Shown: one piece after another, positions 1,466-59,877 of the stretch
How positions within the stretch are numbered: position 1 is the stretch's first letter
Layout: every line of letters begins with the position of its first letter
Source: Zootoca vivipara
Lineage: Eukaryota
Assembly: GCF_963506605.1 (NCBI RefSeq)
Contig: NC_083288.1
Span: 46,500,001 to 46,564,000 of the forward strand
DNA: 64,000 nt
Direction of reading: 5' to 3'
Notes under the pieces: generated by a model
Database searches by the model: none
Seen by the model: only the letters and a program-made list of their open reading frames with translations
Told to the model about the DNA's origin: nothing
Made by a program: the position numbers and the translations under genes

Positions 1466-1635
1466 CAGGGCCGGCCCTAAGGCAAGGCTGGGTGGTGCAA
1501 TGTGCCAGGCCGCCAGGGGGGTGCCGCACTGCTGCGCCTGCCAGACAGCCACGCTGGGAAACGGGGCGGGGGGGGGCACCAGAGGGATCTTCGCACCACG
1601 GCGCCAGGGTGCCAGATATGCTTTAGACGGCCCTG
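1466..1635. mobile_element. hAT-type MITE
   Basis: TIRs cagggccg...cggccctg; exact 8-bp TSD cagagact (1458-1465, 1636-1643). Confidence 0.8.
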
Positions 1636-3399
1636 CAGAGACTGATACATAAGGTTGTACAACAAGTAGTGTTTTAGAACTGATAGTGCAGTCAAGAATA
1701 GGGGGAACTGCAATCTGTACCTGGTTAAAACCTCTTGGCCATATAATCATGGCCTTATGAATGACGAATCCTTTTCCTTCGCTCACACTTCCAACTTTCA
1801 CTCTCTGGAAGGATCTGTTTGGGAAGATGACCATGTTGGTGATATCAAATCCACCTCCCATTTCCCCATTAGCATTAAATGATATTGTTTCTCCAGCTGA
1901 GTTATTGAATGAAATCCCTTGCAGAAATGGTTGCAGCTATTTGAAAGTGGAAAAGAAACAAAGGGCGAGCATGACTCTATGGACATGAAATGCTGGTTAT
2001 TTGTACATTCCTTTCCTTTCTTTTATGCTTTTTTGGCAACAAAGACCCAACCAAATGTGATAAATGGTAGATGAAGGGACCTGCATAGTGATAGAAGAAA
2101 AAATTGATTCCCCATTACAGCCACCCAATTTGAGAGGAAATATGAACCTATTTCGCCAATAATTCCGTGTAGGAAAAGCTTGGATACTCTCTGATGATTT
2201 CTACAAAACTGTTCTGGGCAAAGAATAAAAATGAAGAAGTTTTTAATTGTGAATACATTACCTGCCAAGGCTGGAGATCATGGAGTTTATGTTTTTCCCC
2301 CATCAGCCATTCTTCTGTGGTGGCATCTTGATGAGATGGCCTGCAAGGCATGAGCCACAGCAAAGGCAGCATTGTAAATACTATAGCTATGGCCAGTCAT
2401 GCTCATTTCAAAAACTGGATCAGGCAGGCTGTCTAACCTCTCTTCCCCAGTACATAGTCCACCTTCATAAACCAGCTCTTGGGGATTTGGAAATGAACAG
2501 ACAAATGCTTGCTCCCAGAAATCCTTGAGAAAACCATCTGCCCTGGTGCTGTGGGGCTTTATGGTTTGAAGAAATTCCTGGAAGCCTGGCAGCTCTTTTG
2601 TGTGAATGCTGAAGGAGAAAGCTCCTTGGAAGAATTGTATATCAAAGCCCCTCTGAAGACCTGTTAATATGATATCAATCTGTGATGTCATGATCCACAC
2701 CTTTGCAACTGATGCATTTCCTTTGTAATCAGGATGTGGGAGATAAGTAATAGTCATTAGCAACATGATAGTCAATGAACCTCCATACAGGATCAGTGTG
2801 CTAGGTTTGTCCTCCATCAAAGGTAGATAAACATTTGACAATGTATCGAAAAGTTCATCCATATCACCCATGTGTGCTTGTTTGGGGATTCTTTTTGTAA
2901 AGGCTGAACAGATTCCGTTCTTGGAAAGGAATGGTTCCAGGGTCGACAAGAAATGTTCTCCACCACCATCATCCTCAGCGAAGACCCCGACCCATGTCCA
3001 CCCAAAATGTACAAGTAACTGAATAATTCCCATATATTGATGGTCTTCATTTGGGACCATGCGATAAAAAGAGTTGGAATGTGTTGTTTCAATCTTTCCT
3101 GGTGCAAACGAGCCATATGCGATCTAATAAAAACACATAGTATTATGAGATCTGCTTGGTAGAGTGTCTCCATATATGTGGCTGTTCATGGTAGAAATAT
3201 TTCCTGTGAACTCTGTGAGAGGTAAAGAAAATGACACCTCATCCAGAATTTTTAGCTGATAATATGGCCATGCTTTTTTGAAATGTCTAGAGACGTGTAT
3301 GGTTTACAGAAATGTATTTTAAACAAGGTTATGTCTATCTATTCTCCTTCCTGGGGGGAATGTGAGTGGGGGGGGGGGCAACAGCATACCAGTAATAAA

Positions 3400-3867
3400 G
3401 TAGGGAAATAGACTTTCTAACGGACAGATATCACTCTTATGTGATTGTAACTGTGGATCACCTGAATCGTTGTACCACATATTTTTTAGTTGCGCCCTTC
3501 ATTCATCGTCCAGAAGTAAGTTTCTTGCTCCATATCTAATGGGAATTGCTGATGATTCTAACGAAGCCAAACTGAGATACCTATTGAACGATGAAGAACC
3601 TTCTAGATCACTCACTGTTGCTAGATATCTGATCAGCATCCTATCTCTAAAGAAGAAAAACGGACTTCTGTATGGTCCGGACAACCCTTTTAAACCATGA
3701 ATCAAAATGTGATACTGATCACATCATACTGATGACATTCTGATCAATTTACCCACCAAACGAACAGGGGGTGACGTTTTATGTTGTAAAATTTTACTGT
3801 ATGTTATTTTACTTTTTATCTTATTTTTGTGCAAACCCCTGATGGAAGTCACATGTAGTTCTGGGAA

Positions 3868-3922
<55 letters not shown>

Positions 3923-3972
3923 ATGTGATGGGCCAATGGCTGTAATAAATATCATTCATTCATTCATTCAAT
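3400..3972 (+). mobile_element. 3' fragment of a non-LTR retrotransposon (RTE-X-like)
   Basis: Encodes CDCNCGSPESLYHIFFSCALH...YLLN...VARYL, similar to the C-terminus of the LINE ORF at 34562-36304; ends in aataaa plus a (CATT)n tail; contains (TG)n at 3869-3919. Confidence 0.55.
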
Positions 3973-4154
3973 AAAGTAGGGATTAAAATGTATTACCCTC
4001 CCAACTTTGTTGGACTGATCATGTTCAGATGCCTGATTATTGTCTTCCAAAGCAACAACTCTACTCCAAATTTAAAAATAGAAAGCATAATGCTGGTGGT
4101 CAACAAAAGAGGATTAAAGGCTCTTCCAAGACAAAACTTTTTTTAAAAAAAATG

Positions 4155-4453
4155 TAGTATAAACCCAGATAACTGGAAAACAGTGGCCTGCAAGCGCTCC
4201 AACTGGAGAACAGCCTTTACCAAAGGTATCGAGAATTTTGAAGACGTTCAAACTCAGGACGAAAGAGAGAAACATGCAAAGAGGAAGGCAAATTTGGCAA
4301 ACCCTCACCATGATCAACTCCCACCTGGAAACTAATGTCTTCACTGTGGAAGGATGTGTGGATCCAGAACTGGCTGCCACAGTCACTTACAGACTCAACT
4401 GTGTGCACTGATACAATCTTACTCGGCTATGAATGATTGCCAAAGAAGAAGAC
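4155..4453 (+). mobile_element. RTE-clade LINE 3' end
   Basis: C-terminal CxxC-type motif (cactgtggaaggatgtgtggatcc) and (GAA)n tail; a related copy lies at about 43770-44050. Confidence 0.6.
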
Positions 4454-4504
4454 CCTCCCTAAACCCTACAATCCTATGGCAGATTACAATAAATTAAAAG
4501 AAAC

Positions 4505-4955
4505 TGGTGTGGCTACATAAGGAGTTTACAGATTACCTGAGATTTAAGAAGGGCATGTATAAGAAAGGGAAGAAAGGGGAAATCACAAAGGAGAAGTATA
4601 CAAGCATAGCCAAGAGTTGCAGAGGGAAACTCAGGCTGCCTAAAGCTCAGAATGAGCTCTGGCTTGCATGAGAAGTTAAAATAAATTTTAAGAAGGTTTA
4701 TTTGGCTATGTTGGAAGGAAGAGGGAGCACAAGTTAGTGGTAGGCCTATTGCGGTGAGAAGACAGATAAATGTGATTGGGTGACAACACCTATTTTGCCT
4801 CTGTCTTCACTCAAAAGAAAAGTTGTTCCAAACCTGGTGATAACAGAATAAATTATGTCAGGGAGGATCTGCAGCCCAAGATAGGAAAAGAGGTGATAAG
4901 GAAACACCTAGTTACTTTAAATGTATTGATTTACAAGGAACAAATGTCTTCCCCA
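4505..4955 (+). mobile_element. Degraded CR1 ORF2 internal fragment
   Basis: aaagctcagaatgagctc..., tattttgcctctgtcttcactc motifs typical of the CR1 ORF2 region upstream of RT. Confidence 0.5.
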
Positions 4956-6042
4956 GGTAACTACCAACAGTCAGCTTCACATCAATACCAATAAAGGTCA
5001 TTGAGCAGATTAATATTTTTTTAAGAATGCCATTCAGACCTCTTCCTGCTTCTGAACCATAAAAGCAAAAGCAAACATGGTAAAAGATTAGTTTCTGCAC
5101 ATCCCCATGTCTCCCATTCAGAGATCCTACCTGTGGAATCTTGTAGGGTCTTAAGATATCTGCGATATGGAAGGAAGCATCAGAGCTAAGTCCCCCAATG
5201 ACTGTGATGAGGCTGTTACAGATGCCACACTTGTAGTTTGGGTTAAATCTGTGAGATTTGAAGAGCATGTCCAGGGTGGTACGATAGGTCATCCTAGCAT
5301 CATAGTAGCTGTCATAGATGTGGAACCCAAGTGTTACATTGGGCAAGGTATTGGGATTCTCATTGATCTCATTCACTGCAAACACCAAGGCAAGGACATG
5401 TTGGTGGAACTTCATCACTAAACTGGAAACAGAAGAATTTAGTGTATCACAAGATAATTTCGCCGGACCTGACATCCCACAAAAAGACTCCTTTCTGGCT
5501 GTGACTGGTTCAGATTCCATGGATCTCATTTAATTTGTTACTGATGTCTACAACCTATTAAACAACAAATCATGCATCAAAATACTGAGATCTTGGATCT
5601 GGGCATAGCTGCCAAGTTTTCCCTTTTCTCACGAGGAAGCCTATTCAGCATAATGGAATTTCCCTTTAAAAAAGGGGAGAGCTTGGCAGCTATGGATCTG
5701 GGTGACCAACAGGCCCATGCAGGTGTGGAAAAAAAGTAAAGCAAAATGATGGGGGACATCTGATGGATCAGATGTTATGGATTCCAGTTCCCATCAAACC
5801 TATCCCATAACCACTGGGGCAAAATTGGTTGGATTTGGAATCTGAGGGCCAAATCAAGAAGAGATGTCACATAAGGTTGCCAGAGTCATTTTTTTCTCTA
5901 ACCATTCCAGAAAGCACAAGATCCCAAAAGGTGTTAGAGAAGCACAATTGTATTCCTGGATGGGGACAATCCCAATGTGCCTTTCCTTGAACATCATCAC
6001 CATTGCTATACTGTCCTTCATCTAAGGATCACAGGGTGGTCT

Positions 6043-6045
<3 letters not shown>

Positions 6046-6104
<59 letters not shown>
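6046..6104. repeat. (TA)n microsatellite
   Basis: Perfect TA run. Confidence 0.95.
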
Positions 6105-6108
<4 letters not shown>

Positions 6109-7204
6109 CACTTAAAGAAACTGTTGGTTATGCTGGTGATATGACCAGGACAATGTTCTAGGGAGGAGGGAAAAGAGGAGGAGAGGGAGAAAGGTCCTTA
6201 CTTTGGAAATTCATATAACTCCTGAGAAGGATGTTTTTGGAAGGATACTTCATTAAAATGGTAAATGATATGGGAAGCCATCCCACAAATGAGGAGGTCA
6301 CCTCCTTGATACCATTCATGTTCTACAGGTATAGGAAGGTTAGTGGGGCACTTACTGTTACCTACTCTACATGCAATTGGAAGGAGGAGAAGCACCTTCA
6401 CTAGATCTAGCATCCTGGCAGTTAAGCTTCTCTCTGCCAATACTCAATTTCACAGGGGAAAATCCACCATTGGTTTTTGAATCACCACATCTACAAAAAT
6501 GCATGTCTTAAATACTGGGCGAGATTAGCAGTATTCTACTACCGGTAATTATCTGCCTAGTGATATAATGAAAGGGGATTTGTTAGAGATGAAAGTGACA
6601 GAGCCCTACTCCCGGTTTTTTTTCCACCAAAAGCCTACTAATATCTACTTTCAGGCTTGCCAAGTTATTGTTTTTCCTATTATCTGAAAAGGCTCTGGAG
6701 ATTTTTCTCTCTCTGTGTGTGTGCGTATATATTTATATATGCAGTGGAGCGTGAATAATTGTAGAGGGAAGAATTCCTTCTCAGAGACCTTGAGTAGCAA
6801 TTTTGGAAGCAAACATGTTTTCTTTTGTTTTAAGAAAAAGTTCTGGCTTTTCTGTTCCTAATTTTGGAGTCAGAGTCCAATAACCTCCAAAAGGCCAGAG
6901 GTTAGCCAGCCCTTGTCTAGACAACTTGGAACAACAAAGCCACACTAATTCTCGAAATGAATCACAATGTTCAGCTTCAGTTTGATCTACGGGATCAAAC
7001 CTTTGCTATAAAGTATTAAAATAGCTAGTCATGGAACTGACTAAAGGAGTATTGAGTGTCTCTTTAATCCAGGCATCCCCAAACTGCGGCCCTCCAGATG
7101 TTTTGGCTTACAACTCCCATGATCCCTAGCTAACAGGATCAGTGGTCAGGGACTCAAACCAATGGCTTCAAGTTACAAGAAAGGAGATTCTGACTAAACA
7201 CCTG

Positions 7205-9869: not shown

Positions 9870-9927
9870 ATGCAAAAATGTTATTGAATATGCAAATGTA
9901 TCAATCCATTACAGATTTGTTTAAATA
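9870..9927 (+). promoter_or_regulatory. IgH V promoter of VH1: octamer ATGCAAAT (9890-9897), near-octamer ATGCAAAA (9870-9877), TATA-like TTTAAATA (9920-9927)
   Basis: Canonical heavy-chain orientation octamer about 65 bp upstream of the leader ATG at 9960. Confidence 0.85.
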
Positions 9928-9959
9928 CCAAGTTTCCTACTTGAAATTTAGAGAACATC

Positions 9960-10359
9960 ATGGAGACGATGTTGCCCTTAGCCACATTTCTCTTTGTCTT
10001 CTCTATCCTTAAACCTGGTCAGTTGTATTATTTGTACTTGATTGTAGCGGGAAAATGCCATCCTGCAGACTCTTTTTAACGTTTATAGCATTCTTTCATT
10101 TTATATTTTCAAGTGCTGAGCTAGGATACCTGAGATGTTTTCCTTCTTTTCTATAGTAGTGAGAAGCATGAACAAGTGCAGTCCCATTTTCAAAATTATC
10201 GGATCGCATCATGAGAAATATTTCGCTTTGTTCAGAAAGAGGATTAAGCATTATTTAAAAGTTAAAAATGCAACAGCTTTATTATGTTTTATTATGTTTT
10301 TATATAAGAGCTGGAAGCCACCCAGTGCGGTGGGACAACCCAGTCTGATGCACAGAGTA

Positions 10360-10404
<45 letters not shown>

Positions 10405-10796
10405 TCATATTTCTTTCTTGTATACTCTTGCAGCATGTTTTAAAATTTAATGTGTTTCCCTCCCATTTCTTTCTGCCAGGATCCCCCTCTGAAATTCGAC
10501 TGGTTGAGTCTGGTGAGGGAATCAGGAAGCCTGGAGAATCCCTCCAGTTGACCTGTACTGTCTCTGGTTACACCATCACTGCTGGCTATACTTGGAACTG
10601 GGTCCGCCAGCCTCCAGGGAAAGGACTGCAATGGATAGGAAGGGGATATTTCAGAAGTTCAAGATGGATCACAGAATATGGTTCAGCCTTCCAGAGCAGG
10701 ATTTCCATCTCTCCTGATTCATCCAAGAATGCATATCATCTCCAGCTGAATTCCCTGACAGCTGCAGACACAGCCATGTATTACTGTGCAAGGGAA
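9960..10796 (+). CDS. IGHV: Immunoglobulin heavy-chain variable gene segment VH1 (germline, clan II, IGHV6-like)
   Basis: Leader exon 9960-10017 (METMLPLATFLFVFSILKP-G, donor GTCAGT), intron, V exon 10480-10796 (GSPS-EIRLVESGEGIRKPGESLQLTCTVSG..WNWVRQPPGKGLQWIG..DTAMYYCARE). Both Cys, the conserved Trp and YYC are intact; no stops. Confidence 0.95.
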
Positions 10797-10836
10797 CACA
10801 GTGACACAGAGCAAGTATGCCATCTGTACAAAAAGG
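10797..10836 (+). promoter_or_regulatory. Recombination signal sequence of VH1 (23-type; 24-bp spacer)
   Basis: Heptamer CACAGTG 10797-10803, spacer 10804-10827, nonamer ACAAAAAGG 10828-10836. Confidence 0.9.
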
Positions 10837-11727
10837 AGAAGTTTCCTTTTTTCTGCTTCTGTTGCAAGTTCTTCCTTCAATGCACACCGCACCTCTGGCT
10901 TCTCAGACTGGAAATTACCAGGGGGGTGAGAGGGTGGAAGGAAGAATTCTGCAGTAGAAAGTTCTAGCTTCTCATCAAAGAGCATGATTTTACCAGGGCA
11001 TTGAAATCACAGTGCTTTTAGGGAGAAATAATGAAGCAATGTATTGTTTTGCTTCATCTGCTCCATGTACATTTTTTTCACACATATCTTTACAATTATT
11101 TATGTATCTATTTATTTCATTAAATTTATACACAGCTTGATTGTAAACAAAACACAACACAACACCTTCAAGGAAGATTACAAAAAGAAACATATCCTTC
11201 AGATATATCCATTTTCAAAAACATTGTTTGGAAAAATGCATGGCAAATTTCAGATAAGTTTGAATTTCAAAGGAGAAATGTATTTTGGACCACATATTAT
11301 TTTGGAAAGTGTGAGTTTGATAGATTTGGCTTTAAATTTGTGCTGCATTGATTTTTTTTTTTACCTACCCCTAGCACAGAAACATTACTATCTTCACCTA
11401 CGTTCTATAAAGATCTTGTGCGGCGAGTTTCATCTCCGTGCATTGTGAACCTCACACAGGTTACAGAAGGAAAATAAAATATGTAATGCAAATATGTAAA
11501 GGAAACTACTGAACATCCAGATTTTGCTGATTTTCAATTCCCATAATCTCTTTGGTTGAGTCAATCTTCACACCCTTTTCTGGAGCATCATATTACTTCT
11601 TCTTCTTCTTCTTCTTCTTTTATTTGATTTTTATTGAAGTTTTTATCTCTACAAAATAACAGAACGAAAGAAAGGTGTACACATATGTACATTTTAGTAG
11701 CACAAAGTATCCCACCACCACCACCGT

Positions 11728-11951
11728 ATTACAATGGCACCTTGGGTTAAGAACTTAATTCGTTCTGCAGGTCCGTTCTTAACCTGAAACTGTTATTAAC
11801 CTGAGGCACCACTTTAGCTAATGGAGCCTCCTGCTGTCGCTGTGCTGCCAGTGTGCAATTTCTGTTCTCATCCTGAAGCAAAGTTCTTAACTATTTCTGG
11901 GTTAGCAGAGTCTGTAACCTGAAGCGCCTGTAACCCGAGGTACCACTGTAC
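11728..11951. mobile_element. Tc1/mariner (Tigger-like) MITE
   Basis: Ends tacaatggcacct...gaggtaccactgta; related copy at about 21120-21356. Confidence 0.65.
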
Positions 11952-12021
11952 TTCTATCAACTCTTCCTAGGGTCTTTGATATGAGCCAGGCTAGTTTTAG
12001 AGAGAATTTAGGAAATCTAAC

Positions 12022-12239
12022 TTTGGAATCTCAAATAATTCTTAAGATGGGGGTTCCGTGAAGGAGGGTTCAGCAACATAATAAATTACAGGATGTGTGA
12101 AGCCATACCACCAATGAGAAAGTCACCTGGTTGATACCACTTAATGTGGAACAGTTATGGGATCATTTGTGGGGCAATTACTGGAATCTACTTCACACAC
12201 ATTGGGAGACACGAGAAACACCATAATTAGGTACATCAT
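12022..12239 (-). pseudogene. Orphan V2R exon 1 (frameshifted)
   Basis: Translates MMYLIMVFLVSPNVCEVDSSNCPTNDPITVPH-[frameshift]-KWYQPGDFLIGGMASHIL*; donor GTTAG at 12021; not in the ORF track. Confidence 0.85.
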
Positions 12240-12889
12240 CCTGGCAATAAAACAAATTGCACTGCATTCATCAAAAACATCCGCTTAGTTTAGTTTAGAG
12301 GAAACATGGGTTTCATAGCCTGCACACTATTTAAAGTGAAACATCTCGTCTTTTCTTTAGCATCAACAGTTACAAAGAAATGTCTGCCTTGAGTATTAGC
12401 TGACTTTTCTAGCACGCTTCTTTAGTGTCTGTCTGATAACATGAGTAAAAGGGAGCTGCCAGACATGAAACTGTCAGAGCTCAACCTGCATCTTGCCGAA
12501 GTCCCAGGTGGCACTACATCAGTGGTGTTTTTTATTCCCTTCCAGGCTTGGTTATTTCTTTCTTTTCTTTTCTGCAGTCTAGCATGAAACCTCTGGAGAT
12601 TTCCCCTGATGGCAATCATAGTGATCTGAATAAATGCAGGAAACAATAATGATTTCTTCAGAGTTTGGGGCACTGAATGATTGGTACTTTGGGCAGTAAT
12701 CATGTTTCGTTGCAAAGAAGAAGAAAAAGACTTCCTCATTTGTTTCTTCATGTTTTTAAAGAATTGTGCTTTTTATAGTTTTAACAGTTACCTATTTCCT
12801 TTGCAGTAAGCTGTCCTGTGGCTTGTGGGGGAGAAGGCATAAAATTAATCGGAATAAATATTGTTTGAACACTCCTGTTGTGTAGAGCA

Positions 12890-14381
12890 GGGAGAGGTGA
12901 TTTCAGAACCACTGGCAATAATCTTTGAAAATTCCTGGAGAACAGGAGAAGTTCCAGCAGACTGGAGGAGGGCAAATGTTGTCCCTATTTTCAAAAAGGG
13001 GAAAAGAGAGGACCCAAACAATTACCGCCCAGTCAGCCTGACATCAATACCAGGAAAGATTCTAGAGCAAATCATTAAGCAAACAGTCTGTGAGCACCTA
13101 GAAAGAAACTCTGTGATCACTAAAAGTCAGCATGGGTTCCTGAAAAATAAGTCATGTCAGACTAATCTGATCTCATTTTTTGACAGAATTACAAGCCTGG
13201 TAGATGAAGGGAACACTGTGGATGTAGCCTATCTTGATTTCAGCAAGGCCTTTGACAAGGTGCCCCATGATATTCTTGTAAAGAAGCTGGTAAAATGTGG
13301 GCTAGACAATGCTACCATTCAGTGGATTTGTAACTGGCTTACTGACCGAACCCAAAGGGTGCTCATCAATGGCTCCTCCTCATCCTGGAGAGTAGTGACT
13401 AGTGGGGTGCCACAGGGTTCTGTCTTGGGCCCAGTCTTGTTCAACATCTTTATCAATGACTTGGATGATGGGCTTGAGGGCATCCTGAGCAAGTTTGCAG
13501 ATGACACCAAATTGGGAGGGGTGGCTAACACCCCAGAGGACAGGATCACACTTCAGAATGACCTTAACAGATTAGACAACTGGGCCAAAGCAAACAAGAT
13601 GAATTTTAACAAGGAGAAATGTAAAGTACTACACTTGGGCAAAAAAAATGAAAGGCACAAATTCAGGATGGGAGACACCTGGCTTGAGAGCAGTACATGT
13701 GAAAAGGATCTAGGAGTCTTGGTAGACCACAAACTTGACATGAGTCAGCAGTGTGATGCAGCAGCTAAAAAAGCCAATGCAATTCTGGGCTGCATCAATA
13801 GGAGTATATCATCTAGATCAAGGGAAGTAATAGTACCACTGTATTCTGCTCTGGTCAGACCTCACCTGGAGTACTGTGTCCAGTTCTGGGCACCACAGTT
13901 CAAGAAGGATACTGATAAGCTGGAACGTGTCCAGAAGAGGGCAACCAAAATGGTCAAAGGCCTGGAAATGATGCCTTATGAGGAACGGCTTAGGGAGCTG
14001 GGTATGTTTAGCCTGGAGAAGAGAAGGTTAAGGGGTGATATGATAACCATGTTCAAATATATAAAAGGATGTCATAATGAGGAGGGAGAAAGGTTGTTTT
14101 CTGCTGCTCCAGAGAAGCGGACACGGAGCAACGGATTCAAACTACAAGAAAGAAAATTCCACCTAAACATTAGGAAGAACTTCCTGACAGTAAGAGCTGT
14201 TCGACAGTGGAATTTGCTGCCAAGGAGTGTGGTGGAGTCTCCTTCTTTGGAGGTCTTTAAGCAGAGGCTTGACAGCCATCTGTCAGGAATGCTTTGATGG
14301 TGTTTCCTGCTTGGCAGGGGGTTGGACTGGATGGCCCTTGTGGTCTCTTCCAACTCTATGATTCTATGATTCTATGATTCT
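12890..14381 (+). mobile_element. CR1 LINE, 5'-truncated, uninterrupted RT reading frame
   Basis: ORF 12861-14297 with [24 protein letters not shown]; (ATTCTATG)n 3' tail. Confidence 0.95.
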
Positions 14382-14405
14382 AAGTCTGCCTTCTGTACAA
14401 AAAGG
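14382..14405 (+). pseudogene. Remnant of a third VH unit: 3' part of RSS spacer plus nonamer
   Basis: aagtctgccttctgtACAAAAAGG directly after the CR1 tail; the following ~1.2 kb (to about 15594) is homologous to the flank downstream of VH2 (17978-19190). Confidence 0.8.
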
Positions 14406-15593
14406 AGAAGTTTCCTTTTTTCTGCTTCTGTTGCAAGTTCTTCCTTCAATGCACAACTCTGTTTTTCATCCAGAAGGCATTCAAAATTACATGTTCATTG
14501 TTATAAAAAAAAATGTGTGTTCCCTGCATTCAATGGATTCACTTCTTCTTCTACCTTCCAAGGGGCAGATGGGGCTCGTCAGCCTGGGAAGGTAGCCCAT
14601 CTAGGAGAAGCCCATCCCCACATGAAATCCTGAATCTCCAGAAAAAAATCAGAAGGAGACAGCGATCTGGACATTAAAATAAAACTGGGCGGACAGGATG
14701 TCTATAAATATTAAAGCACTGCTCCTCTGGCTTATCAAATAAATTTCCGGGGTGATGATGTGGGTGGGGAGAATAAGAGTTCTATGACGGATAATTTCTT
14801 CAACTGGTGTATCTCACTGCTGACTATTTCTGTCTCAAGTAATTTAGATTGCTATGAATCATGCAATTGATGTCAGGAGCAAATAGGCATTGCAGTCTTC
14901 AGTCCAAATATAATTTACAATGCTTAAAGCCACGTGTTTCTGTTTCTTTCTATACATAGATTGTGCGTACTAGGGGGACACATTTTGAGGGGGAAATGGA
15001 ATCAAGTCAGTCTGCTTCATCAAGCAGCTTGTCCAAGCCAAAGAAAACTGCCATATCACTCTGAATTAAATCATGGACCTCCAGTGCAATTAGGAAGGAG
15101 TCAGAGATCTGGACATTAAATAAAACTGTGCAGACATTGTATCTGCAAACATGGAAGCATCGCTCCTCTGGCTTCTCAGACTGGAAATTACCAGGGTGGT
15201 GAGAGGGTGGAAGGAAGAATTCTGCACACTATTTAAAGTGAAACATCTCATCTTTCCTTTAGCACCAGCAGTTACAAAGAAATGTCTGCCTTGAATATTA
15301 GCTGACTTTTCTAGCACGCTTCTTTAGTGTCTGTGTGATAACATGAGTAAAGGGGAGCTGCCAGACTGTCAGAGCTCAACCTGCGTCTTGCCCAAGTCCC
15401 AGATGGCACTACATCAGTGGTGTTTTTAATGCCTTTCCAGGCTTAGTTATTTTTTTCTTTTCTTTTCTGCAGCCTAGCATGAAACCTCTGGAGATTTCCC
15501 CTGGTGACAATTATAGTGATCTGAATAAATGCAGAAGACGATAATGATTTCTTTAGAATTTAGGGCACTGAATGATTGGTACTTTTGGCAGTA

Positions 15594-15951
15594 AAGCAGG
15601 TTCTCCCCTTAAGGAGAGCATGGGTTGCGGAAGGGTTAACAAGGGTTCCTGGTTTGGTGGGCTGGTCAGTTTGGATGGCCACTGAGGGTATTGTTGCTGG
15701 GTAGAATGTTATGTTGCAATTTGTTTGATTGACAGCCACAGCCTATATGTACTGGGCAAGCAGCTTGCGGTTTCACTTTTGGTGCTTGCAACGGATCTCC
15801 CTCCCTATATTTAGGGGTTTGTTTGCACATGACGTTGCTGTGCCTGTCATGGGGTCATCCGTATCGATGCAGGGGCCTAGTAGGAATTTTGCCACTTGGC
15901 TGATTGGCTAGTGACTTGTGGTTTTTGCCTACTACATAGCAAAATGTCACA
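15594..15951 (+). mobile_element. ~0.8-kb unclassified repeat, 5' half (copy 2)
   Basis: gcaggttctccccttaaggagagcatggg start as in the other copies; truncated where the duplicated VH2 unit begins. Confidence 0.7.
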
Positions 15952-16094
15952 AGATATAATATATTTATCCAACCGTACTGTCTTGTGGTTTCAGCTGTGA
16001 GGCTGCTTTCTCATCTGCTTTCTTTACATAGTCACATGTTTTTATTTATATACCACACCTTCCACAGATACAGCTGTGCTCAGTTATAGATATA

Positions 16095-16416
16095 CAGTGG
16101 AACCTCGGTTTATGAACACCTCGGTTTACGAACGCCGCAGACCCATCTGGAACGGATTAATTCATTTTCCATTACTTTCAATCGGAAAGTTCGCTTCAGT
16201 TTATGAACACTTCAGTTTATGAACAGACTTCCGGAATCAATTACACCCATGCTTCGGGTTAAGTACGCTTCAGGTTGAGTACTCCGTGGACCCGTCTGGA
16301 ACGGATTAATCCACTTTCCATTACTTTCAATGGGAAAGTTTGCTTCAGTTTATGAACGCTTCAGTTTATGAACAGACTTCCGGAACCAATTGTGTTCATA
16401 AACTGAGGTACCACTG
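16095..16416. mobile_element. Tc1/mariner-type MITE with internal duplication
   Basis: cagtgg...ccactg termini, TA TSD; absent from the paralogous site at about 9255; related to 27419-27848. Confidence 0.85.
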
Positions 16417-17062
16417 TATGAGAGAGAGAGATAAATAAATACAGACTTATAGGTTTATAGATATATGTCTTGAAAAATGATGCATTATAAATACCAAGCT
16501 GAGTTCTACTCACAGAAGCCCCACTGAAACAAGTGGACCTAACTTATGTTAATTAATTTAATTCGGCCTGCTCTGATTAAAGCTTAGTTTAGTACTACTC
16601 GTGATTAATGCAAGATAACATTAAAAATCTAAAAATTAACAGTTCATTTAACAGACATTTGAATTTAAATAAATAAACACAGGTCAAGTGAAACTACCCA
16701 AGAGCTTCACTTACAAAATTAACCTGAATGCTGATGATATTGGTATGTGCAACCACACCACCACACCACAGTTTTATCTTTCGGTTCAAAATCTCAGACT
16801 GTCCCAATTTAATTAATTTAATTAATTATTCCAGAAGCTATTTCTAGCTTTTCTTATGCAGAAGGAGCTGATGGAGCTTCCCACAATATCTGCTGAGCAG
16901 TCTCAGTGTGAGCTTTAGAAATCAAAATTTAAATCTTTGTGTTTCATTTTGCACTGAATGTGCATTTCATCATTTAAGCACAACAGTCACCTGTGTGGAA
17001 AGTAAGGGCAGAGATATGATTAGGATCCTTCTACAATTGGCTGCAGTCCTTTTTATAACCAA

Positions 17063-17120
17063 ATGCAAAAATGTTATTGAATATGCAAATGTATCAATCC
17101 ATTACAGATTTGTTTAAATA
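17063..17120 (+). promoter_or_regulatory. IgH V promoter of VH2 (octamer ATGCAAAT 17083-17090, TATA-like TTTAAATA)
   Basis: Same arrangement as the VH1 promoter. Confidence 0.85.
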
Positions 17121-17152
17121 CCAAGTTTCCTACTTGGAATTTAGAGAACATC

Positions 17153-17533
17153 ATGGAGACGATGTTGCCCTTAGCCACATTTCTCTTTGTCTTCTCTATC
17201 CTTAAACCTGGTCAGTTGTATTATTTGTACTTGATTGTAGCGGGAAAATGCCATCCTGCAGACTCTTTTTAACGTTTACAGCATTCTTTCCTTTTATATT
17301 TTCAAGTGCTGAGCTAGGATACCTGAGGTATTTTCCTTCTTTTCTATAGTAGTGAGAAGCATGAAAAAGTGCAGTCCCATTTTCAAAATTATCGGATCGC
17401 ATCATTAAAAATGTTTAGCTTTGTTCAGAAAGAGGATTAAGCATTATTTAAAAGTTAAAAATGCAACAGCTTTATTATGTTTTATTAAAGCCACCCAGTG
17501 TGGCTGGGGCATCCCAGTCTGATGGGCAGAGTA

Positions 17534-17569
<36 letters not shown>

Positions 17570-17961
17570 TCATATTTCTTTGTTGTATAATCTTGCAGCA
17601 TGTGTTAAAATTTAATGTGTCCCCCCCCCATTTCTTTCTGCCAGGATCCCCCTCTGAAATTCGACTGTTTGAGTCTGGTGAGGGAATCAGGAAGCCTGGA
17701 GAATCTCTCCGGTTGACCTGTACTGTCTCTGGTTACACCATCACTGCTGGCTATACTTGGCACTGGGTCCGCCAGCCTCCAGGGAAAGGACTGCAATGGA
17801 TAGGAAGGGGATATTTCAGCAGTTCAAGATGGATCACAGAATATGGTTCAGCCTTCCAGAGCAGGATTTCCATCTCTCCTGATTCATCCAAGAATGCATA
17901 TCATCTCCAGCTGAATTCCCTGACAGCTGCAGACACAGCCATGTATTACTGTGCAAGGGAA
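17153..17961 (+). CDS. IGHV: Immunoglobulin heavy-chain variable gene segment VH2 (germline, clan II, IGHV6-like)
   Basis: Leader exon 17153-17210, V exon 17645-17961 (EIRLFESGEGIRKPGESLRLTCTVSG..WHWVRQPPGKGLQWIG..YYCARE); open frame, GT-AG intact. Confidence 0.95.
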
Positions 17962-18001
17962 CACAGTGACACAGAGCAAGTCTGCCATCTGTACAAAAAG
18001 G
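17962..18001 (+). promoter_or_regulatory. Recombination signal sequence of VH2 (24-bp spacer)
   Basis: CACAGTG 17962-17968, spacer 17969-17992, ACAAAAAGG 17993-18001. Confidence 0.9.
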
Positions 18002-21611: not shown

Positions 21612-24600
21612 TTACAGTCTTTTTGTGATATGTTCCCTACAGTTCAGCTCAGGCCTCAGAATAATGATGTAGCATTTGGGGGCAAAGATACAAACCAGTA
21701 GTCCAGCACTGGAGGCCAAAATGGAGAAGATCTCCACAGCCACCATATATTTCCCCTTGGTGCTCACATATGCTGGGACAAAGGACAACCAAACACTGCA
21801 AAACACCAGCATGCTGAAGGTGATGAACTTGGCTTCATTAAAAGTATCTGGCAACTTCCTGGCCAGGAACGCCACGGTGAAGCTGATGATGGCCAGGAGA
21901 CCTATGTAGCTCAGGACAAGATAAAACATGGTGACAGAGCCTTCACTGCATTCTGCTACAATTTCTCCACTGAGTGAATGCATGTCGAAATCTGGAAAAG
22001 GAGGAGAGGTCCCTAACCACACCATACAAATACTAGCTTCAATAAAGGAGGAGGAAAGGACAATGGAGTTGTTCAGTCTTTTCCCTACCCACTTTCTTAT
22101 GCTGGAACCTGGCCTGGTGGCCTGAAAAGCTAAAACCACAGTGATGGTTTTCGCCAACACACAAGACACAGCCACTGAGAAAATGATACCAAATGCAGAT
22201 TGACGGAGAGCGCAAGTCACCTTCCTTGGTTGTCCAAGAAATTGCAATGAACAGAGGAAACAGAGGAGGAGAGAAATGAGTAGAATAAATGTGAGGTCCC
22301 GGTTGTTTGCTTTGACAATGGGGGTATCTTTGTGTTTAACAAAGATTACTAGCACCAGTGCTGTGCTTATGGAAAAGATAACTGCAACCAAGACTAAGCC
22401 AATCCCTAAAGGTTCTTCATAAGACAGGAAAGTTATCATTTTGGCAATACACCCATCTCTGTCCTTGCTAGGGTATTGATCCTCTGGGCACTTGAAGCAG
22501 TCATTCATGTCTAGGTCAATATATGAAAGAGAGAAATAAAGAGAGCGGTGTCATATTTCAGTTAAGATAAGGGGGGGGCATTTGTTGATTAAAAAGTAAT
22601 TGGAAATAAATGGAAGGAAAAGCTTGAATTGAGTTACTATCAGTTACATAAATCTAGGTAAAAATGGTAAAGAACCCTGGAGGGCTAAGTCCAGTCAAAA
22701 GGCAACTATGGGGTTGCAGCACTAATCTCACTTTCAGGCCAAGGGAGCAGGCGTTTGTCCATAGACAACTTCCCAGATCATGTGGCCAGCATGACTAAAC
22801 CACTTCTGGCACTGTTACATAAAGCAGGTTCTCCCCCTAGAGGAGAACATGGGTTGCGGAAGGTTTAACAAGACATCCCAGGGTTGGAGAGGCGGGTCAG
22901 TTTGGATGGCTACATGTGTGATTGGTGGGTGTGCTGTTGCTGCAGAATTTTGCATGTAGCAAATGATTGACTGACAGCCTTAACCCCTATATATGCTTAG
23001 TGAGCAGCTCTCAGTTCCACTTTTGCTGCTCACAACAAATCTCCCGCCCGCCCTCCTCTAATTTTAGACGCTCTTGCATTGACCTTGCTTTGCCTCTCAT
23101 GAGGTCGCCTGTTTTGGATCAGGGGCTTGGTAGGAATTTTGCCACTTGGCTGATTGGCTGGTGCCAGGTGGTTTTTGCCTACTACGCTGCAATAAGTCAC
23201 AACTTGTAATGTGGGCGGTTAGGCATTGGTTCAAATTGGATGGTGGAGGGGTACGGATTTTGGTTGGGCCTGCCCCTCATGGTTGCTGCTGCCTTTAGGG
23301 GTATTCCTTTAAAGGAATCCTGGGGCTCTACATGTTTGTCCGTTTATCCCCGTTAGGGGCCAGGGTCAGGCATGAGCCTCGGGGAGCATCTGAGGGATGA
23401 GGTCAAGGGCGTGGGTCCCTGCCCCGATCTCTCCCATAGGGTGCTTACCTACTGGCTCCCCTACTAGGCTAGTGGGAGTCAGATCTGTCCCAGGCGGGGG
23501 ACAGATGGCAAGAACCAATGCCTAATCAACCACTCACGTTCAGTTGTATTTAAATAAAGTTGTGGCCAAATTAATGCCAAAAACCTTAAACTTAAAATAT
23601 TGTGTGAAGTGTGAGTTATTGGGGGGATGTCTTGGTACCCCGGCAGGCAAATGTAGTAGAGATCAGTGAGGCAGTGTAGGTGGGACACTATTGCTCTCCT
23701 AGCACACCAACACAACAGATCACTGTCTCTAACTGAGATGAGGAGGTGAGGGGCAAAACCTGATGAGTTTGGTCCAGTGTAGTGTCTCAGATTAGCTCCA
23801 TCTCACCAGCCACTACTGAATATATGCCTATGGAAAATAGGGTTGTGTGTCTGACCACTAGCGCCATTTCAGTTTAGTCCCACATGCTACTGAATATAGT
23901 ATTCAACAGCTCTCTAAAATGATTCTTAGCCTGAAAATGTCTCCCACCTTTGATATCACTTGCTGACTTGTAGATGAATGCATGGATAAACTCCATTAAA
24001 AAATTATTGTGTTTAAAGAGACCCCATTCCCTAGATTTTCCATCATAAAGATACATTTATGCTACAAGAGTTAATACTTCTTAACGGGTCTCCTGGTTTT
24101 GTTCTGCAATGGAGTATCCATTGCATTGTGTCACCTACCCTTTCGGTTGGAAATCTTGCCTTCTGGGCATGGAACACAGTCATAGCAGCAGAACTTCTCG
24201 CCTTCCTTCTTTTTCTTCTGATACCCAGCATTGCAGTACTCATTACACACGGAAATCGGACAAACCTTACCATAAACATGAAATTTTTAAAGGAAAAGTG
24301 AAATTTAATCTGTTGTTGGTGCTGTTCAACAGATGATCTACGAAGAAACAATTGCTCATATTGGTGTAACTGTACCAAGATTGAACTATAATCTGTTTTA
24401 GTATTTTAACTTTTGTATGTTTTAAAGTAGGGTTGTATTCCCCCCTGCCCTTGATTTTACTGTTTTGTCTTTTGTAAACCAGTTGGTTTTTTTTTATAAT
24501 CAAGAGGTGTATGACTTTTATGAAATATAATAAATAAATAAAAGTTTTAGAGAAATGGCATTATGCAGGACATGTTCAAACAGAATATTTTCTGATGATG

Positions 24601-27600
24601 GCAGAGATTCTTTTTAATGGAGGAAAATTGTGGGTACCAGAGCAGGGGAAGGGAGCCTTGCTGAATCAATCTAAAGGCCCATATAGTCCAGTTTCCTGTT
24701 CTCATGGTAGCCAACCAGATTCCTATGAGAAGCTTGCAAACTCCCAAACAGTGATCATCAAAAAGTGCCATACAGTCCTACTACTGATCAAAGTTGATTT
24801 TGCTATCCTGGTAAGAATCTGCCTTTTTGCACAGAAAACTTTAAATTGTTTTCACCTGTTATGAGGAATATATAAACCTAACACTTGAACATTACATATG
24901 TGATTTACGTGTGATACTGATTTCATTACAGTAGACCAAGTAAGAGGAACCAGTAGCCTTCCAGATGTTGTTGAATTACAGCTTTAATCAGCCATAGTCT
25001 ACATCTCTGTCAGGGAAGATGGGAGTTGAAGGACAGCAACTACTAGAGAACCAAAGATTCCCCCATCTCTGCAACAGACTGACTCTGACAGAATGCAGCA
25101 AATTACATTTCCAGTCCCAGATCACCCATTCAGAAAAGGTAGCAGCACCAACAAATATTATAGAATTCAGACCTGATTGAAACTTTCATGCCACACAATT
25201 ATATCTGCATTGAGAGCAATTTCTTTTCCTTCAGGAGCCTTGGGATAAACCATTCCAATTTTCACCCTAAGGAAGGAGATGTTCGGAAACGTGATCATGT
25301 TCACAATGTCAAATCCACCTCCCATCTCCCTATGATTAGTCAAGGACACCGTTTCTCCAGCTGAGTTGTTAAATGAAATGCCTTGGAGAAATGAGTGGAT
25401 CTAATGGAAAAGGGAAAAAGACACACGGGGAACTCAACTGTTTCCATGCCAAGATTTACAAACCATTCTCAAAAACAAACAAACAAACAAAACAATCTTA
25501 GGGAAATTCTCATATCTAGTAGTGGTAGAAGACTAGAAAAATACAACTTACCTGTAGGGATCATGTAAGTGACTGCATCTCAGGGATTATATTGGGAATC
25601 ATGCATTCATAACTTTATGTGCGGTTTGAGGGGAATGTTCTTGAGCTGGTGGCTCCACCTGAACAGACTACTCCTGCCTGGGTTATGGAATGTGTGGCTT
25701 CTTGGTGTATATCCTGTGGAATGTATGCACACTCCATGATCCTCTACCTGGCAAGCACGTTTCAGTCTGGGTTTCAAGAAACAGGCATCTGTTGCCATTT
25801 GTTTCCTGCCTGGTTGTAAAACATTTGGTGTCTTTGACCAAAAGGGCATTCTGCATTCCTCTCTGGCAAACATCCTCCCAAAGTGCCTTTGATGTAGATC
25901 TACTATCTTTCACAGGTTTCTGTGTGTGTTTACTGCTTTTACAATTTCCTGCTTCTGCTCCTATTCACATGCTTTGTAGTGTTAATCAGGGGAATGTGAG
26001 AAGGGGGTAGGATTTCAGGATAGTCGCTGTTAATTATTCACTGTACTAGAATTTTATTGGAGCATTTGAATCTTGGTGTCACCTTAATTATAATAAAAAT
26101 GGCCTGGAGAGGAAGGGGGGAGATTCATTCTTTTCCTTCTCTCTCTCAGGCTACTTGCTGGTCAAGAGCTCTGTTCCTTTGTCTTATTTCCAATGTGGTT
26201 TTGCCACACTTACCTTTTTCAGGCTTCACATATATGGGGAAATAAGGTTCCCCCAAAACACACACCATCACTCCAACTTCTTTGTAGTTGAGAAGTTGTA
26301 TCCAGTGTTAGTCATATTCAGAGACAACTCATTGAGATTATGTGACATGAGAAACTTACATTCATTAATTTTAAGGAGTCAGCTCTGTGTAGAGCTTAGT
26401 TTGACTTGAATACAACCAAGTGTACCAAATCTACCAGTGGATGATACAGTTGTTTCAATTTGCATTAATATATTCACAACAATAGCCATTTTGTAGTTAA
26501 GACTACCTGCCAAGTCTGAATATCTTGAAGCCTTTCCCCCTGTGCCATCGCTCTGAGATTGGACCTGGATGAGCCCATGCTGTGCAAAGCATGCGCCACT
26601 GCATAGACTGCATTATAAACGCTGTAGCTGTGGCCAGTCATCTGCATTTCAAAGATAGACTCAGGGAGATTCTCCACCTTTTCCTCTCCAGTACATATGC
26701 CATCCACATCCATTGGCACACTGGGGTTTGGCAATGAACAGTCAAAGGCTTGCTGCCAGAAGGCTCGGGAAAAACCATTATCTTGTGTCTTGCAAGGCTG
26801 TATATTTCGAATATATCCCCGGAACCCCAGACATTGATTTGAGTGAATTGTGAAGGAAATACTGCCCTGGAATATTTGAAAATTACTACGTGTTATTTGG
26901 CCTGTTACTGCAAAATCAATCTGGGTTGTCATAATCCACACCTTTCCAATGTATGTGTTTTCCCTATATCCAGGATCTTCCAGGGCCACTAAGGCACTTA
27001 ACCACAGGATGATCATACTTTCTCCATAGACAACAAATGTTCTGACCTTGCTATCCAAAAAAGGCAAATAAATTTCGGAGGTCATATCAATCAGTTCATC
27101 AAGGGAAAGGAAGCGACCTTGGTTGGGGATTCTTTGGGTGAAGGCTGAACAGATGCCATTCTGAGAAAGCAGTGGCTCCATCGTCTGCAAGAAATGGTCT
27201 CCGCTGTCATCACCCACAGCAAGCAGGCCAACCCATGTCCATCTAAAACTCTGTAGCACACGGATAATCCCCATATACTGACCGGCTTCATTGGGGGCCA
27301 TGCGGTAAAATGAAGCAACCTGCCTTGTTCCGGTACTTTCTGGGGCAAAGGACCCATAGGTAAGCTGAAAAAGAAATGCACAAATATTTTAGGGATGGGT
27401 TAGTAGGAATTCTTTAGTACAGTGGTCCCTCGGTATACAAACACAATTGGTTCCGGAAGTCTGTACTTAACCTGAAACGTATTTAACCTGAAGCAAACTT
27501 TCCCATTGAAAGTAATGGAAAGTGGATTAATCTGTTCCAGACGGTCCGTGGAGTACTTAAACTGAAGCGTACTTAACCTGAAGTGAACTTTCCCATTGAA

Positions 27601-32589: not shown

Positions 32590-33002
32590 CAGTAACATCT
32601 TAAGGGTATCCAGCGCCGTGATTCAAGAATCCTCCGGTGCCCCCCCCATGGTGGCAGTAGCGCGCGGCTGAAGGGTGGAGACGGAGGATGGCGGAGCCTG
32701 GATGGCGCACACCACCTTGCTGGCCTGGGCGCAGAGGGGGCTGCTCGGCCTCCTGCCCTGGACCGGCCCCTCCTTGGCGCCTCCCTCCAGCGGCCGCTCC
32801 GGGACGTGGCGGTGGCGCACGGCCATTGAGTTTCCTCCATGAAGCAGAATCAGCAAGTCTCCTGCCTAGAGTGGCAGCAGGGGGGGGGGCTGCCAGCAGC
32901 AGCTGCTCCCAGACACCAGCCGTTCGACGCCCCTTCCACGCCACTGGTGGCCAGGCGCCCTGGCGCCTTGCGCCACCCAGCCCGGGCCTAGAGACGGCCC
33001 TG
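32590..33002. mobile_element. GC-rich hAT-type MITE
   Basis: 3' TIR gagacggccctg, 8-bp TSD cctccaat on both sides. Confidence 0.7.

Positions 33003-59843: not shown

Positions 59844-59877
<34 letters not shown>

What the first reader, a model, noticed from the sequence alone, without database searches (positions are those of the whole stretch)
9870..18001. Intact immunoglobulin heavy-chain V gene segments embedded inside a vomeronasal V2R receptor array
Seen: two complete VH segments (octamer and TATA promoter, leader exon, spliceable intron, open V exon, heptamer-nonamer RSS) on the plus strand, between V2R gene A and V2R gene B, opposite to every V2R. I found no D, J or C segment in the 64 kb by eye. 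Known: antigen-receptor loci often neighbour olfactory receptor clusters, VH orphons exist, and immune genes have been co-opted in the rodent vomeronasal organ (H2-Mv MHC Ib with V2Rs, Fpr genes). I do not know of a description of VH segments interleaved with V2R genes. Inference, three options: (a) the lizard IGH locus interdigitates with a V2R cluster, so V-to-DJ joining would delete or invert V2R genes in B cells; (b) these are conserved orphons; (c) they were co-opted as non-rearranging genes in a chemosensory-immune cluster.
Basis: partly seen in the sequence, partly recalled or inferred. Interest (0 to 1): 0.92.

Follow-up and report, generated by a model that had tools for sequence, protein, structure and literature searches.

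The report
Antibody V genes inside lizard V2R array
Two intact antibody heavy-chain V gene segments really do sit between vomeronasal V2R receptor genes in this lizard, and they most likely belong to the working antibody gene pool; this resembles the known mixing of smell-receptor genes with T-cell-receptor V genes in mammals.

Summary
Two near-identical IGHV segments lie on the + strand at 9890-10836 and 17083-18001. Each has an octamer, a TATA-like box, a 58-nt leader exon, a GT..AG intron, an open V exon and an RSS. The RSS spacer is 24 nt, one more than canonical. They sit between minus-strand V2R genes A and B. V2R genes B to E have all six exons open.

New here:
- A decayed VH remnant lies in the next V2R spacer (33805-33925).
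- A V2R exon-1 pseudo-exon lies between the two VHs (12017-12246).
- The 64 kb holds no D, J or C segment.
- In a run of a related species, a contig carries a V about 96% identical. It is joined exactly at the heptamer border to N/D plus a JH (YFDYWG).
- In Podarcis lilfordi, an annotated protein is collinear with this VH unit. Its accession number is bracketed by V2R accessions on the same 53.85-Mb scaffold.

Best reading (about 0.6): these are rearranging IGHV segments in an IGH V region interdigitated with a V2R array. An orphon cluster (about 0.2) is not excluded, because D-J-C could not be located. Co-option as non-rearranging genes has no support.

The scan noted the same interleaving about 627 kb away in this genome (s1-850514, unchecked). 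I rate it a new variant of a known kind.

The parts
9890..9927 (+). VH-1 promoter: octamer ATGCAAAT (9890-9897) and TATA-like TTTAAATA (9920-9927)
9960..10017 (+). VH-1 leader exon (L-part1), 19 codons plus 1 nt, GT donor at 10018
10018..10479 (+). VH-1 leader intron (462 nt, holds an (AAT)n run and what looks by eye like a SINE tail; not tested)
10480..10796 (+). VH-1 V exon: 11-nt L-part2 plus FR1 to the start of CDR3 (...YYCARE), open
10797..10836 (+). VH-1 RSS: CACAGTG, 24-nt spacer, ACAAAAAGG
17083..17120 (+). VH-2 promoter: octamer (17083-17090) and TATA-like box (17113-17120)
17153..17210 (+). VH-2 leader exon, identical to that of VH-1
17645..17961 (+). VH-2 V exon, open; 5 nt and 4 aa differences from VH-1
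17962..18001 (+). VH-2 RSS: CACAGTG, 24-nt spacer, ACAAAAAGG
33805..33925 (+). Old VH remnant: FR3 only (...AADTAVYYC), 8 extra codons and a stop, then CACAGTG, a 12-nt spacer and ACAAAATCT
12017..12246 (-). V2R exon-1 pseudo-exon (70% nt identity to exon 1 of V2R A; frameshift and stops) between VH-1 and VH-2
12320..12755 (+). Block X, copy 1 of a repeat downstream of the VHs. Other copies are at 15222-15594 and 18817-19250. It holds the small exon used by the P. lilfordi model CAI5791306.1 (12581-12646, 15473-15541, 19068-19136).
12861..14382 (+). Retroelement fragment with a reverse-transcriptase domain (CR1-like by my reading; no element family was tested) inserted in the VH-1 unit
1185..6377 (-). 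V2R gene A, exons 1-5 (exon 6 lies off the window's left edge)
21612..31188 (-). V2R gene B, six exons, all open
38133..44827 (-). V2R gene C, six exons, all open
47104..54385 (-). V2R gene D, six exons, all open
56030..63872 (-). V2R gene E, six exons, all open

Best explanation
VH-1 and VH-2 are ordinary, functional germline IGHV gene segments of a VH lineage with a long CDR2, shared with Anolis and turtles. They lie in a stretch of the lizard's heavy-chain V region that is interdigitated with a tandem array of intact V2R genes.

Inferred mechanism: in B-cell precursors the octamer/TATA promoter opens the segment. RAG then cuts at the heptamer and joins the V exon to a pre-formed D-JH. If D-J-C lies downstream on the + strand, the join removes everything in between from that chromosome, including V2R genes B to E. 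This costs a B cell nothing. In vomeronasal neurons the DNA stays germline and the V2R genes are used as usual.

The mixing arose by repeated local duplication in a region where both families expand. The 7.15-kb VH-1/VH-2 duplication is the most recent round.

Shown: the anatomy, the interleaving, conservation of the coding parts, and use of a family member in a V-D-JH join in a related species.

Inferred: that these two copies themselves rearrange, and that D-J-C lies in cis.
For: 1. Every element of a functional IGHV is present in both copies.
2. All 28 closest proteins carry a V-set domain. Every one with an informative name is an Ig heavy-chain V, and the rest are generic Ig-like labels from vertebrates. 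7719 distinct PDB chain sequences match; the best-listed are antibody, VH or nanobody chains.
3. Leader plus V exon differ at 5 of 375 nt between the copies, against 47 of 1126 in the upstream region and intron (Fisher p = 0.008). The leader is identical, and 4 of the 5 coding changes are replacements.
4. In run X15 (organism B, a relative) a 303-nt contig at depth 26.7 matches V exon 10533-10796 with 11 differences. It stops fitting exactly at 10796, the last base before the heptamer. It then continues TACGGGGGTAGCTACTTCGACTACTGGGGA, which reads Y G G S Y F D Y W G, i.e. N/D plus a JH motif.
5. A DNA run of organism B holds 22% of the 31-mers of the 1.1-kb stretch. That is about what 5% divergence leaves, so the expressed V is as close as an orthologue would be.
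6. An older VH remnant in the same orientation lies in the next V2R spacer, and a V2R exon-1 pseudo-exon lies between the VHs. This shows long co-residence and not a single recent hop.
7. P. lilfordi protein CAI5791306.1 is collinear with the VH unit: leader, V exon and block X. V2R proteins CAI5791192.1, CAI5791198.1 and CAI5791318.1 on the same 53,850,232-bp scaffold bracket its accession number.
8. An unchecked scan note reports IGHV/V2R interleaving about 627 kb away in the same genome.
Against: - No D, J or C segment is in the 64 kb, and their position in this genome is unknown.
- The rearranged contig comes from another species and is 96% identical, not 100%. It could derive from a paralogue elsewhere. 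8 of its 10 listed differences fall in CDR1 and CDR2.
- In organism A's own RNA runs only 3 reads were laid. All lie on the conserved FR3 end and all run on into unlike sequence. They could come from other VH families.
- The RSS spacer is 24 nt, one more than canonical.
- Reading accession order as gene order in P. lilfordi is an inference.
- X15 is only guessed to be RNA.
Confidence: 0.6

Rival explanations
1. Orphon cluster. The VHs, and the others noted nearby, are copies that moved out of the IGH locus into the V2R array. They are intact because they are young or are kept alike by gene conversion, but they are too far from D-J-C to rearrange.
For: - No D, J or C in 64 kb.
- The V2R cluster extends many megabases on this piece.
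- The rearranged contig is not identical to either copy.
Against: - Coding parts are better conserved than the flanks.
- The RSS and promoter are intact in both copies.
- A homologous unit is retained among V2R genes in P. lilfordi.
- An older VH remnant shows residence well before the recent duplication.
- From my own knowledge: human orphon VHs are mostly pseudogenes.
Confidence: 0.2
2. Part of a separate, undescribed rearranging locus, for instance a second IGH-like locus that also uses VH-type segments carrying 12-spacer RSSs.
For: - The VH remnant at 33805-33925 carries a 12-nt-spacer RSS.
- An unchecked scan note reports an intact VH-type gene with a 12-spacer RSS 744 kb away.
Against: - The only junction seen is a normal V-N/D-JH join.
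- VH-1 and VH-2 carry the 23-type RSS expected of IGHV.
- A single 12-spacer match next to one heptamer can arise by chance.
Confidence: 0.07
3. Assembly artefact. IGH sequence was falsely joined into a V2R array.
For: Both families are repetitive. The junctions were not tested with long reads here.
Against: - No gaps in the window.
- It would need several false joins.
- A V2R exon-1 pseudo-exon lies inside the VH repeat unit, and a VH remnant lies in another V2R spacer.
- The indication in P. lilfordi points to the same arrangement.
- Five runs, which span at least two studies, hold 86-92% of the words of the VH-1 stretch. This does not test the junctions.
Confidence: 0.05
4. Co-opted, non-rearranging Ig-like genes that act with V2Rs in the vomeronasal organ.
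For: - Head-to-head position about 3.5 kb from a V2R promoter.
- The P. lilfordi model splices from inside the V exon to a downstream exon. If real, that would be an unrearranged transcript.
Against: - A V exon alone has no J, C or membrane anchor.
- The RSS is kept intact in both copies.
- A family member is seen joined to D-JH.
- No reads fell on the leader, the intron or downstream in the RNA runs laid.
Confidence: 0.03

Closest known systems
Olfactory receptor genes interspersed among the 5'-most TRAV genes. Human: OR10G2 between TRAV1-1 and TRAV1-2, OR4E2 between TRAV1-2 and TRAV2. Mouse: Olfr1507-1509 between TRAV1 and TRAV2. Sheep likewise (PMC4574546).
   Same: Chemosensory GPCR genes are interleaved with rearranging antigen-receptor V segments, so V-to-J joining removes chemoreceptor genes in lymphocytes.
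   Different: That case involves the TRA locus and single-exon ORs, with two or three genes at the distal edge. This case involves IGHV and six-exon V2Rs, several genes per window, apparently over hundreds of kb, with signs of joint duplication.
Unrelated genes inside antigen-receptor loci: trypsinogen genes in the TRB locus, ADAM6 between IGHV and IGHD (own knowledge, not checked here).
   Same: Functional non-immune genes lie between V segments and D-J-C and are lost on rearrangement.
   Different: Those are few genes and are not a co-expanding multigene family.
Human IGHV orphons on chromosomes 15 and 16, next to OR pseudogenes
   Same: VH segments lie next to chemoreceptor genes and away from D-J-C.
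   Different: Orphons are mostly defective and never rearrange. Here both copies are intact, conserved, and of a family seen rearranged.
Human IGHV6-1-type VH (clan II, long CDR2).
   Same: The window VHs share the long CDR2 (GRGYFRSSRWITEYGSAFQSRISISPDSSKN) with turtle, Anolis and bat 'V-II' sequences. The window VHs pair with Anolis VHs (support 86/89), and the turtle and bat sequences fall in the same wider clade (94/94).
   Different: FR1 (EIRLVESGEG) looks more like clan III. Orthology to human IGHV6-1 was not tested with a human sequence.
H2-Mv MHC class Ib genes with V2Rs in rodents.
   Same: An immune-type gene family lies physically and functionally near V2Rs.
   Different: H2-Mv proteins are complete molecules co-expressed with V2Rs. 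A germline V segment is not a complete gene, and no vomeronasal expression is shown.

Membership tests
Functional germline IGHV gene segment | Two-exon structure: leader exon, short intron, V exon starting with an 11-nt L-part2; open frame | tested here: met
   The intron is long (462 and 434 nt) because of inserted repeat sequence.
Functional germline IGHV gene segment | Conserved 1st Cys, Trp of WVRQ, 2nd Cys in YYC | tested here: met
   C25, W40 and C102 of the translation are invariant in the alignment.
Functional germline IGHV gene segment | RSS with consensus heptamer, 23-nt spacer and A-rich nonamer directly after the V exon | tested here: met
   CACAGTG and ACAAAAAGG, 0 expected by chance. 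The spacer is 24 nt, i.e. 23+1 (met with this departure).
Functional germline IGHV gene segment | Octamer ATGCAAAT and TATA box upstream of the leader | tested here: met
   the octamer lies 63-70 nt before the ATG in both copies.
Functional germline IGHV gene segment | Closest relatives are Ig heavy-chain V regions, not light-chain or TCR V | tested here: met
Functional germline IGHV gene segment | Somatic joining to D and JH | tested here: inconclusive
   a V 95.8% identical is joined at the exact heptamer border to N/D plus YFDYWG, but in a related species. In the window's own species only 3 ambiguous reads were found.
Functional germline IGHV gene segment | Linkage in cis to IGHD, IGHJ and IGHC | not testable with these tools
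   None in the 64 kb.
V2R (class C vomeronasal receptor) genes | ANF_receptor ligand-binding domain, Cys-rich linker (CCYDC) and 7tm_3 domain in a six-exon gene | tested here: met
   Genes B to E have all six exons open. The best hits are named 'vomeronasal type-2 receptor 26-like' in many squamates.
VH orphon | Located outside the IGH locus and never rearranged | not testable with these tools
   The position of D-J-C is unknown.

The most novel reading that the evidence does not exclude
In lacertid lizards the heavy-chain V region and a V2R array are one interwoven tandem array over at least about 0.7 Mb, and they grow by duplicating mixed VH+V2R cassettes. If so, antibody V and pheromone-receptor repertoires are physically coupled in their birth-and-death evolution. 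Every distal V-to-DJ join would then delete many intact V2R genes in B cells. Two systems of one-gene-per-cell choice would share one chromatin domain.
Probability: 0.4. Interest if true: 0.65.

Novelty: new variant of a known kind. Interest (0 to 1): 0.5.

Why it matters
If the IGH V region really runs through a V2R array, several consequences follow.

- **Annotation.** IGH locus limits and V counts in squamates could not be set by the usual assumption of a pure V-gene run. Many V2R genes would count as lying inside the IGH locus.
- **Shared chromatin.** It would be a natural case of two large gene families, each expressed from one chosen member per cell, sharing one stretch of chromatin in different cell types. 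Locus contraction and loop extrusion in pro-B cells would have to cross active-looking V2R promoters. Vomeronasal gene choice would have to ignore VH promoters about 3.5 kb away.
- **Generality.** It extends the known olfactory-receptor/TRAV neighbourhood to a second antigen-receptor locus and a second chemoreceptor family. That points to a general tendency of such arrays to share genomic territory.

It does not change how V(D)J recombination is understood.

Tried and rejected
- **The look-up of encoding contigs.** I tried it for the Podarcis lilfordi and Gekko kuhli VH proteins to read their neighbours.
- **Third protein search** (with the P. lilfordi V2R P0146). It returned no further P. lilfordi V2R, so the map around the VH accession could not be tightened.
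- **The search of earlier findings beyond the window's right edge.** A look-up by sequence was blank. Word look-ups for IgM, IgD, IgY, JH or constant regions found no note. Only about 779 windows of this genome carry notes.
- **Nine paper searches**. None turned up a description of IGHV/V2R interleaving. The squamate TCR papers read concern the duplicated TRB locus, not VH.
- **Organism A RNA runs.** Only 3 reads were laid on the stretch, from about 6% of each run read, so expression in the window's own species is undecided.
- **Flanks of the VH remnant.** They share only reverse-transcriptase retroelement sequence with the VH-1/VH-2 flanks. A recent common cassette for the A-B and B-C spacers is rejected.
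- **TCR V or VH-delta type reading.** Rejected, because the only junction seen carries a WG-type JH motif.
- **Joined models.** Exons were handled one by one by reference.


Full report
**1. What is in the sequence**

Region 9600-18300 was read directly. There are two copies of a complete heavy-chain V gene segment on the + strand.

VH-1:
- octamer ATGCAAAT at 9890-9897
- TATA-like TTTAAATA at 9920-9927
- leader exon 9960-10017, coding METMLPLATFLFVFSILKP plus one base
- GT..AG intron 10018-10479
- V exon 10480-10796. It begins with the usual 11-nt second leader part and reads SPS/EIRLVESGEGIRKPGESLQLTCTVSGYTITAGYTWNWVRQPPGKGLQWIGRGYFRSSRWITEYGSAFQSRISISPDSSKNAYHLQLNSLTAADTAMYYCARE without a stop.
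- directly after it, CACAGTG, a spacer, and ACAAAAAGG (10797-10836)

VH-2 has the same parts at 17083-18001.

The heptamer-spacer-nonamer pattern occurs only at these two places, against none in 100 shuffles. The spacer is 24 nt, one more than canonical. The octamer word by itself is not rarer than chance in the window; its position is what is informative.

Identity of the domain:
- Pfam calls the domain V-set.
- All 28 closest database proteins carry a V-set domain. Those with informative names are Ig heavy-chain V regions, and the rest are labelled only 'Ig-like domain-containing' or 'hypothetical' (turtles, Anolis, other lizards, mammals, coelacanth).
- 7719 distinct PDB chain sequences match; the best-listed are antibody, VH or nanobody chains.
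- In a tree the two copies pair with Anolis VHs (support 86/89). These sit in a wider clade (94/94) with turtle VHs, a bat 'V-II' sequence and a Gekko sequence; the order inside that clade is not resolved. They share the long CDR2 with all of these.

**2. The surroundings**

Five V2R genes lie on the minus strand. ANF_receptor and 7tm_3 exons were found by Pfam. Exons 1, 2, 3, 4 and 6 were found by comparison among the paralogues. Exon 5 was found by its CCYDC motif.
- Gene A: 1185-6377, last exon off the window.
- Genes B, C, D and E: 21612-31188, 38133-44827, 47104-54385 and 56030-63872.

In genes B to E no exon carries a stop. The stops seen in three alignments lie in intronic overhang. I checked exons one by one and made no joined model. 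The best database hits are 'vomeronasal type-2 receptor 26-like' proteins of many squamates, at up to 80% identity.

The VHs lie in the 15-kb A-B spacer. VH-1 is head-to-head with gene A, about 3.5 kb from its exon 1. VH-2 is tail-to-tail with gene B, about 3.6 kb from its stop codon.

**3.

- A profile built from the 28 VH homologues finds a third VH-like piece at 33736-33894, in the B-C spacer, + strand. It is only FR3 (...AADTAVYYC), about 75% identical in DNA to VH-1. It is followed by eight extra codons, a stop, CACAGTG, a 12-nt spacer and ACAAAATCT. It is old and dead.
- A V2R exon-1 pseudo-exon lies between the two VHs at 12017-12246, minus strand. It is 70% identical to exon 1 of gene A and carries a frameshift and stops.
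- The 64 kb holds no JH-like, TCR/IgL J-like or D-like element.
- The window has no N.

**4. The duplication**

VH-1 and VH-2 are copies of a 7.15-kb unit: 9266-10886 matches 16417-18051, and 14382-15594 matches 17978-19189. The VH-1 unit is interrupted by a retroelement fragment with a reverse-transcriptase domain (12861-14382) and by a partial internal repeat.

| Region compared | Differences |
|---|---|
| Leader | 0 of 58 nt |
| V exon | 5 of 317 nt |
| Upstream region and intron | 47 of 1126 nt, plus indels |

The contrast between coding and non-coding parts gives Fisher p = 0.008. Four of the five V-exon changes replace an amino acid (V8F, Q22R, N39H, R58S). This fits constraint or gene conversion on the coding parts, with change tolerated in and near the CDRs. 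The sample is small.

**5. Is the family used?**

One call of read laying was allowed, on 9700-11000.

Run X15 comes from organism B, a relative. One DNA run of organism B holds 22% of the stretch's 31-mers, about what 5% divergence leaves. In X15:
- One 303-nt contig at depth 26.7 matches 10533-10796 with 11 differences (95.8% identity).
- Eight of the ten listed differences fall in CDR1 or CDR2.
- The contig stops fitting exactly at 10796, the last base before the heptamer.
- It runs on as TACGGGGGTAGCTACTTCGACTACTGGGGA, which reads Y-G-G-S-Y-F-D-Y-W-G. That is a short N/D stretch followed by the YFDYWG start of a heavy-chain J.

This is a V-D-JH join made at the RSS. A TCR J would read FG, not WG.

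It shows that a V of this family rearranges as an antibody heavy-chain V, and that the V is as close to VH-1 as an orthologue in that species would be. It does not prove that the copy sitting among V2R genes is the one used. X15 is only guessed to be RNA; a V-D-J join is somatic either way.

In the window's own species (raw RNA reads X21-X23, about 6% of each run read) only three reads were laid. All lie on 10712-10799 and all run on into unlike sequence. That region is the most conserved part of any VH, so these reads are uninformative.

**6. Another species**

Protein P0028, Podarcis lilfordi CAI5791306.1 'Ig heavy chain V region M315', has a leader and FR1-CDR1 about 86% identical to VH-1 by my count from the alignment. 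Its last 23 residues match a small exon in block X, a repeat that follows each VH unit in the window (12581-12646, 15473-15541, 19068-19136; 86-91% identity). So the VH unit with its downstream block is conserved in P. lilfordi.

The odd model uses a GT inside the V exon spliced to block X. It may reflect an unrearranged sterile transcript or an annotation artefact. That annotation merged RNA-seq, Iso-Seq, protein and ab initio evidence (PMC10214862).

Three P. lilfordi V2R proteins on the same 53,850,232-bp scaffold have accessions CAI5791192.1, CAI5791198.1 and CAI5791318.1. These bracket the VH accession. The first two belong to one 90% cluster and are six numbers apart, which fits numbering that follows gene order. 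My inference is that the P. lilfordi VH also sits inside a V2R-rich stretch, with a V2R within about a dozen models on one side.

**7. Context from the scan (unchecked notes, leads only)**

- IGHV and V2R interleaved and co-duplicated as a roughly 31-kb cassette, 627 kb before this window (s1-850514).
- A VH-type gene with a 12-spacer RSS at -744 kb, and a TCR V at the edge of the V2R cluster at -1.24 Mb.
- V2R notes up to 13.6 Mb before the window, and an OR set mixed with V2Rs noted at -18.4 Mb.
- No note mentions D, J or C segments, but few windows of this genome carry notes.

**8. Reading**

The most likely explanation (0.6) is that these are working IGHV segments in a part of the IGH V region that is interwoven with a V2R array. 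The evidence against an isolated orphon is:
- the intact signals in both copies
- the conserved coding parts
- the family's use in a V-D-JH join
- the older remnant in the next spacer
- the P. lilfordi indication

An orphon cluster (0.2) remains possible until D-J-C is placed. Other readings are a separate rearranging locus (0.07), misassembly (0.05) and non-rearranging co-option (0.03).

**9. Comparison with what is known**

None of the nine searches turned up a paper describing V2R genes among IGHV segments. The principle is known, however.
- From my own knowledge, trypsinogen genes lie inside the TRB locus and ADAM6 inside IGH.

So this is a new variant of a known kind. It would be of clear interest to comparative immunogenetics and to work on chemoreceptor gene choice, but it is not a new mechanism.

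Noticed in passing
window 33898-33925: The dead VH remnant carries a 12-nt-spacer RSS (CACAGTG, 12 nt, ACAAAATCT) and 8 extra codons after the Cys, unlike VH-1 and VH-2. It recalls the scan note of an intact VH-type gene with a 12-spacer RSS 744 kb away. It could be a second VH-like class in this region, or chance.
   Followed up: partly
window 12581-12646, 15473-15541, 19068-19136 (block X): A small open exon, repeated downstream of each VH unit, matches the C-terminus of the P. lilfordi model CAI5791306.1. That model splices from a GT inside the V exon (TGG|GTCCGC) to this exon. It may be a sterile germline VH transcript or an annotation artefact.
   Followed up: partly
window 32640-33000: A GC-rich, CpG-island-like stretch lies in the AT-rich B-C spacer. 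It overlaps a 199-aa ORF (32688-33287, +) with no Pfam hit.
   Followed up: no
window 12861-14382 (+), 37020-38045 (-), 34562-36304 (-): Retroelement fragments with reverse-transcriptase domains (CR1-like by my reading; no element family was tested). The first two are 95-97% alike, so the element was active recently. One interrupts the VH-1 unit.
   Followed up: partly
window 46336-46407 (-): An isolated 24-codon remnant of a V2R 7TM C-terminus lies in the C-D spacer. It is a trace of a lost V2R copy.
   Followed up: no
window 10018-10479 and 17211-17644: The VH leader introns are unusually long (462 and 434 nt) for V genes. They hold an (AAT)n run next to what looks by eye like a SINE tail.
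   Followed up: no
window 10780-10790: The embedded heptamer TACTGTG at the end of FR3 is present in both VHs. It is the cryptic RSS used in VH replacement, discussed in PMC3526766 (abstract seen).
   Followed up: no
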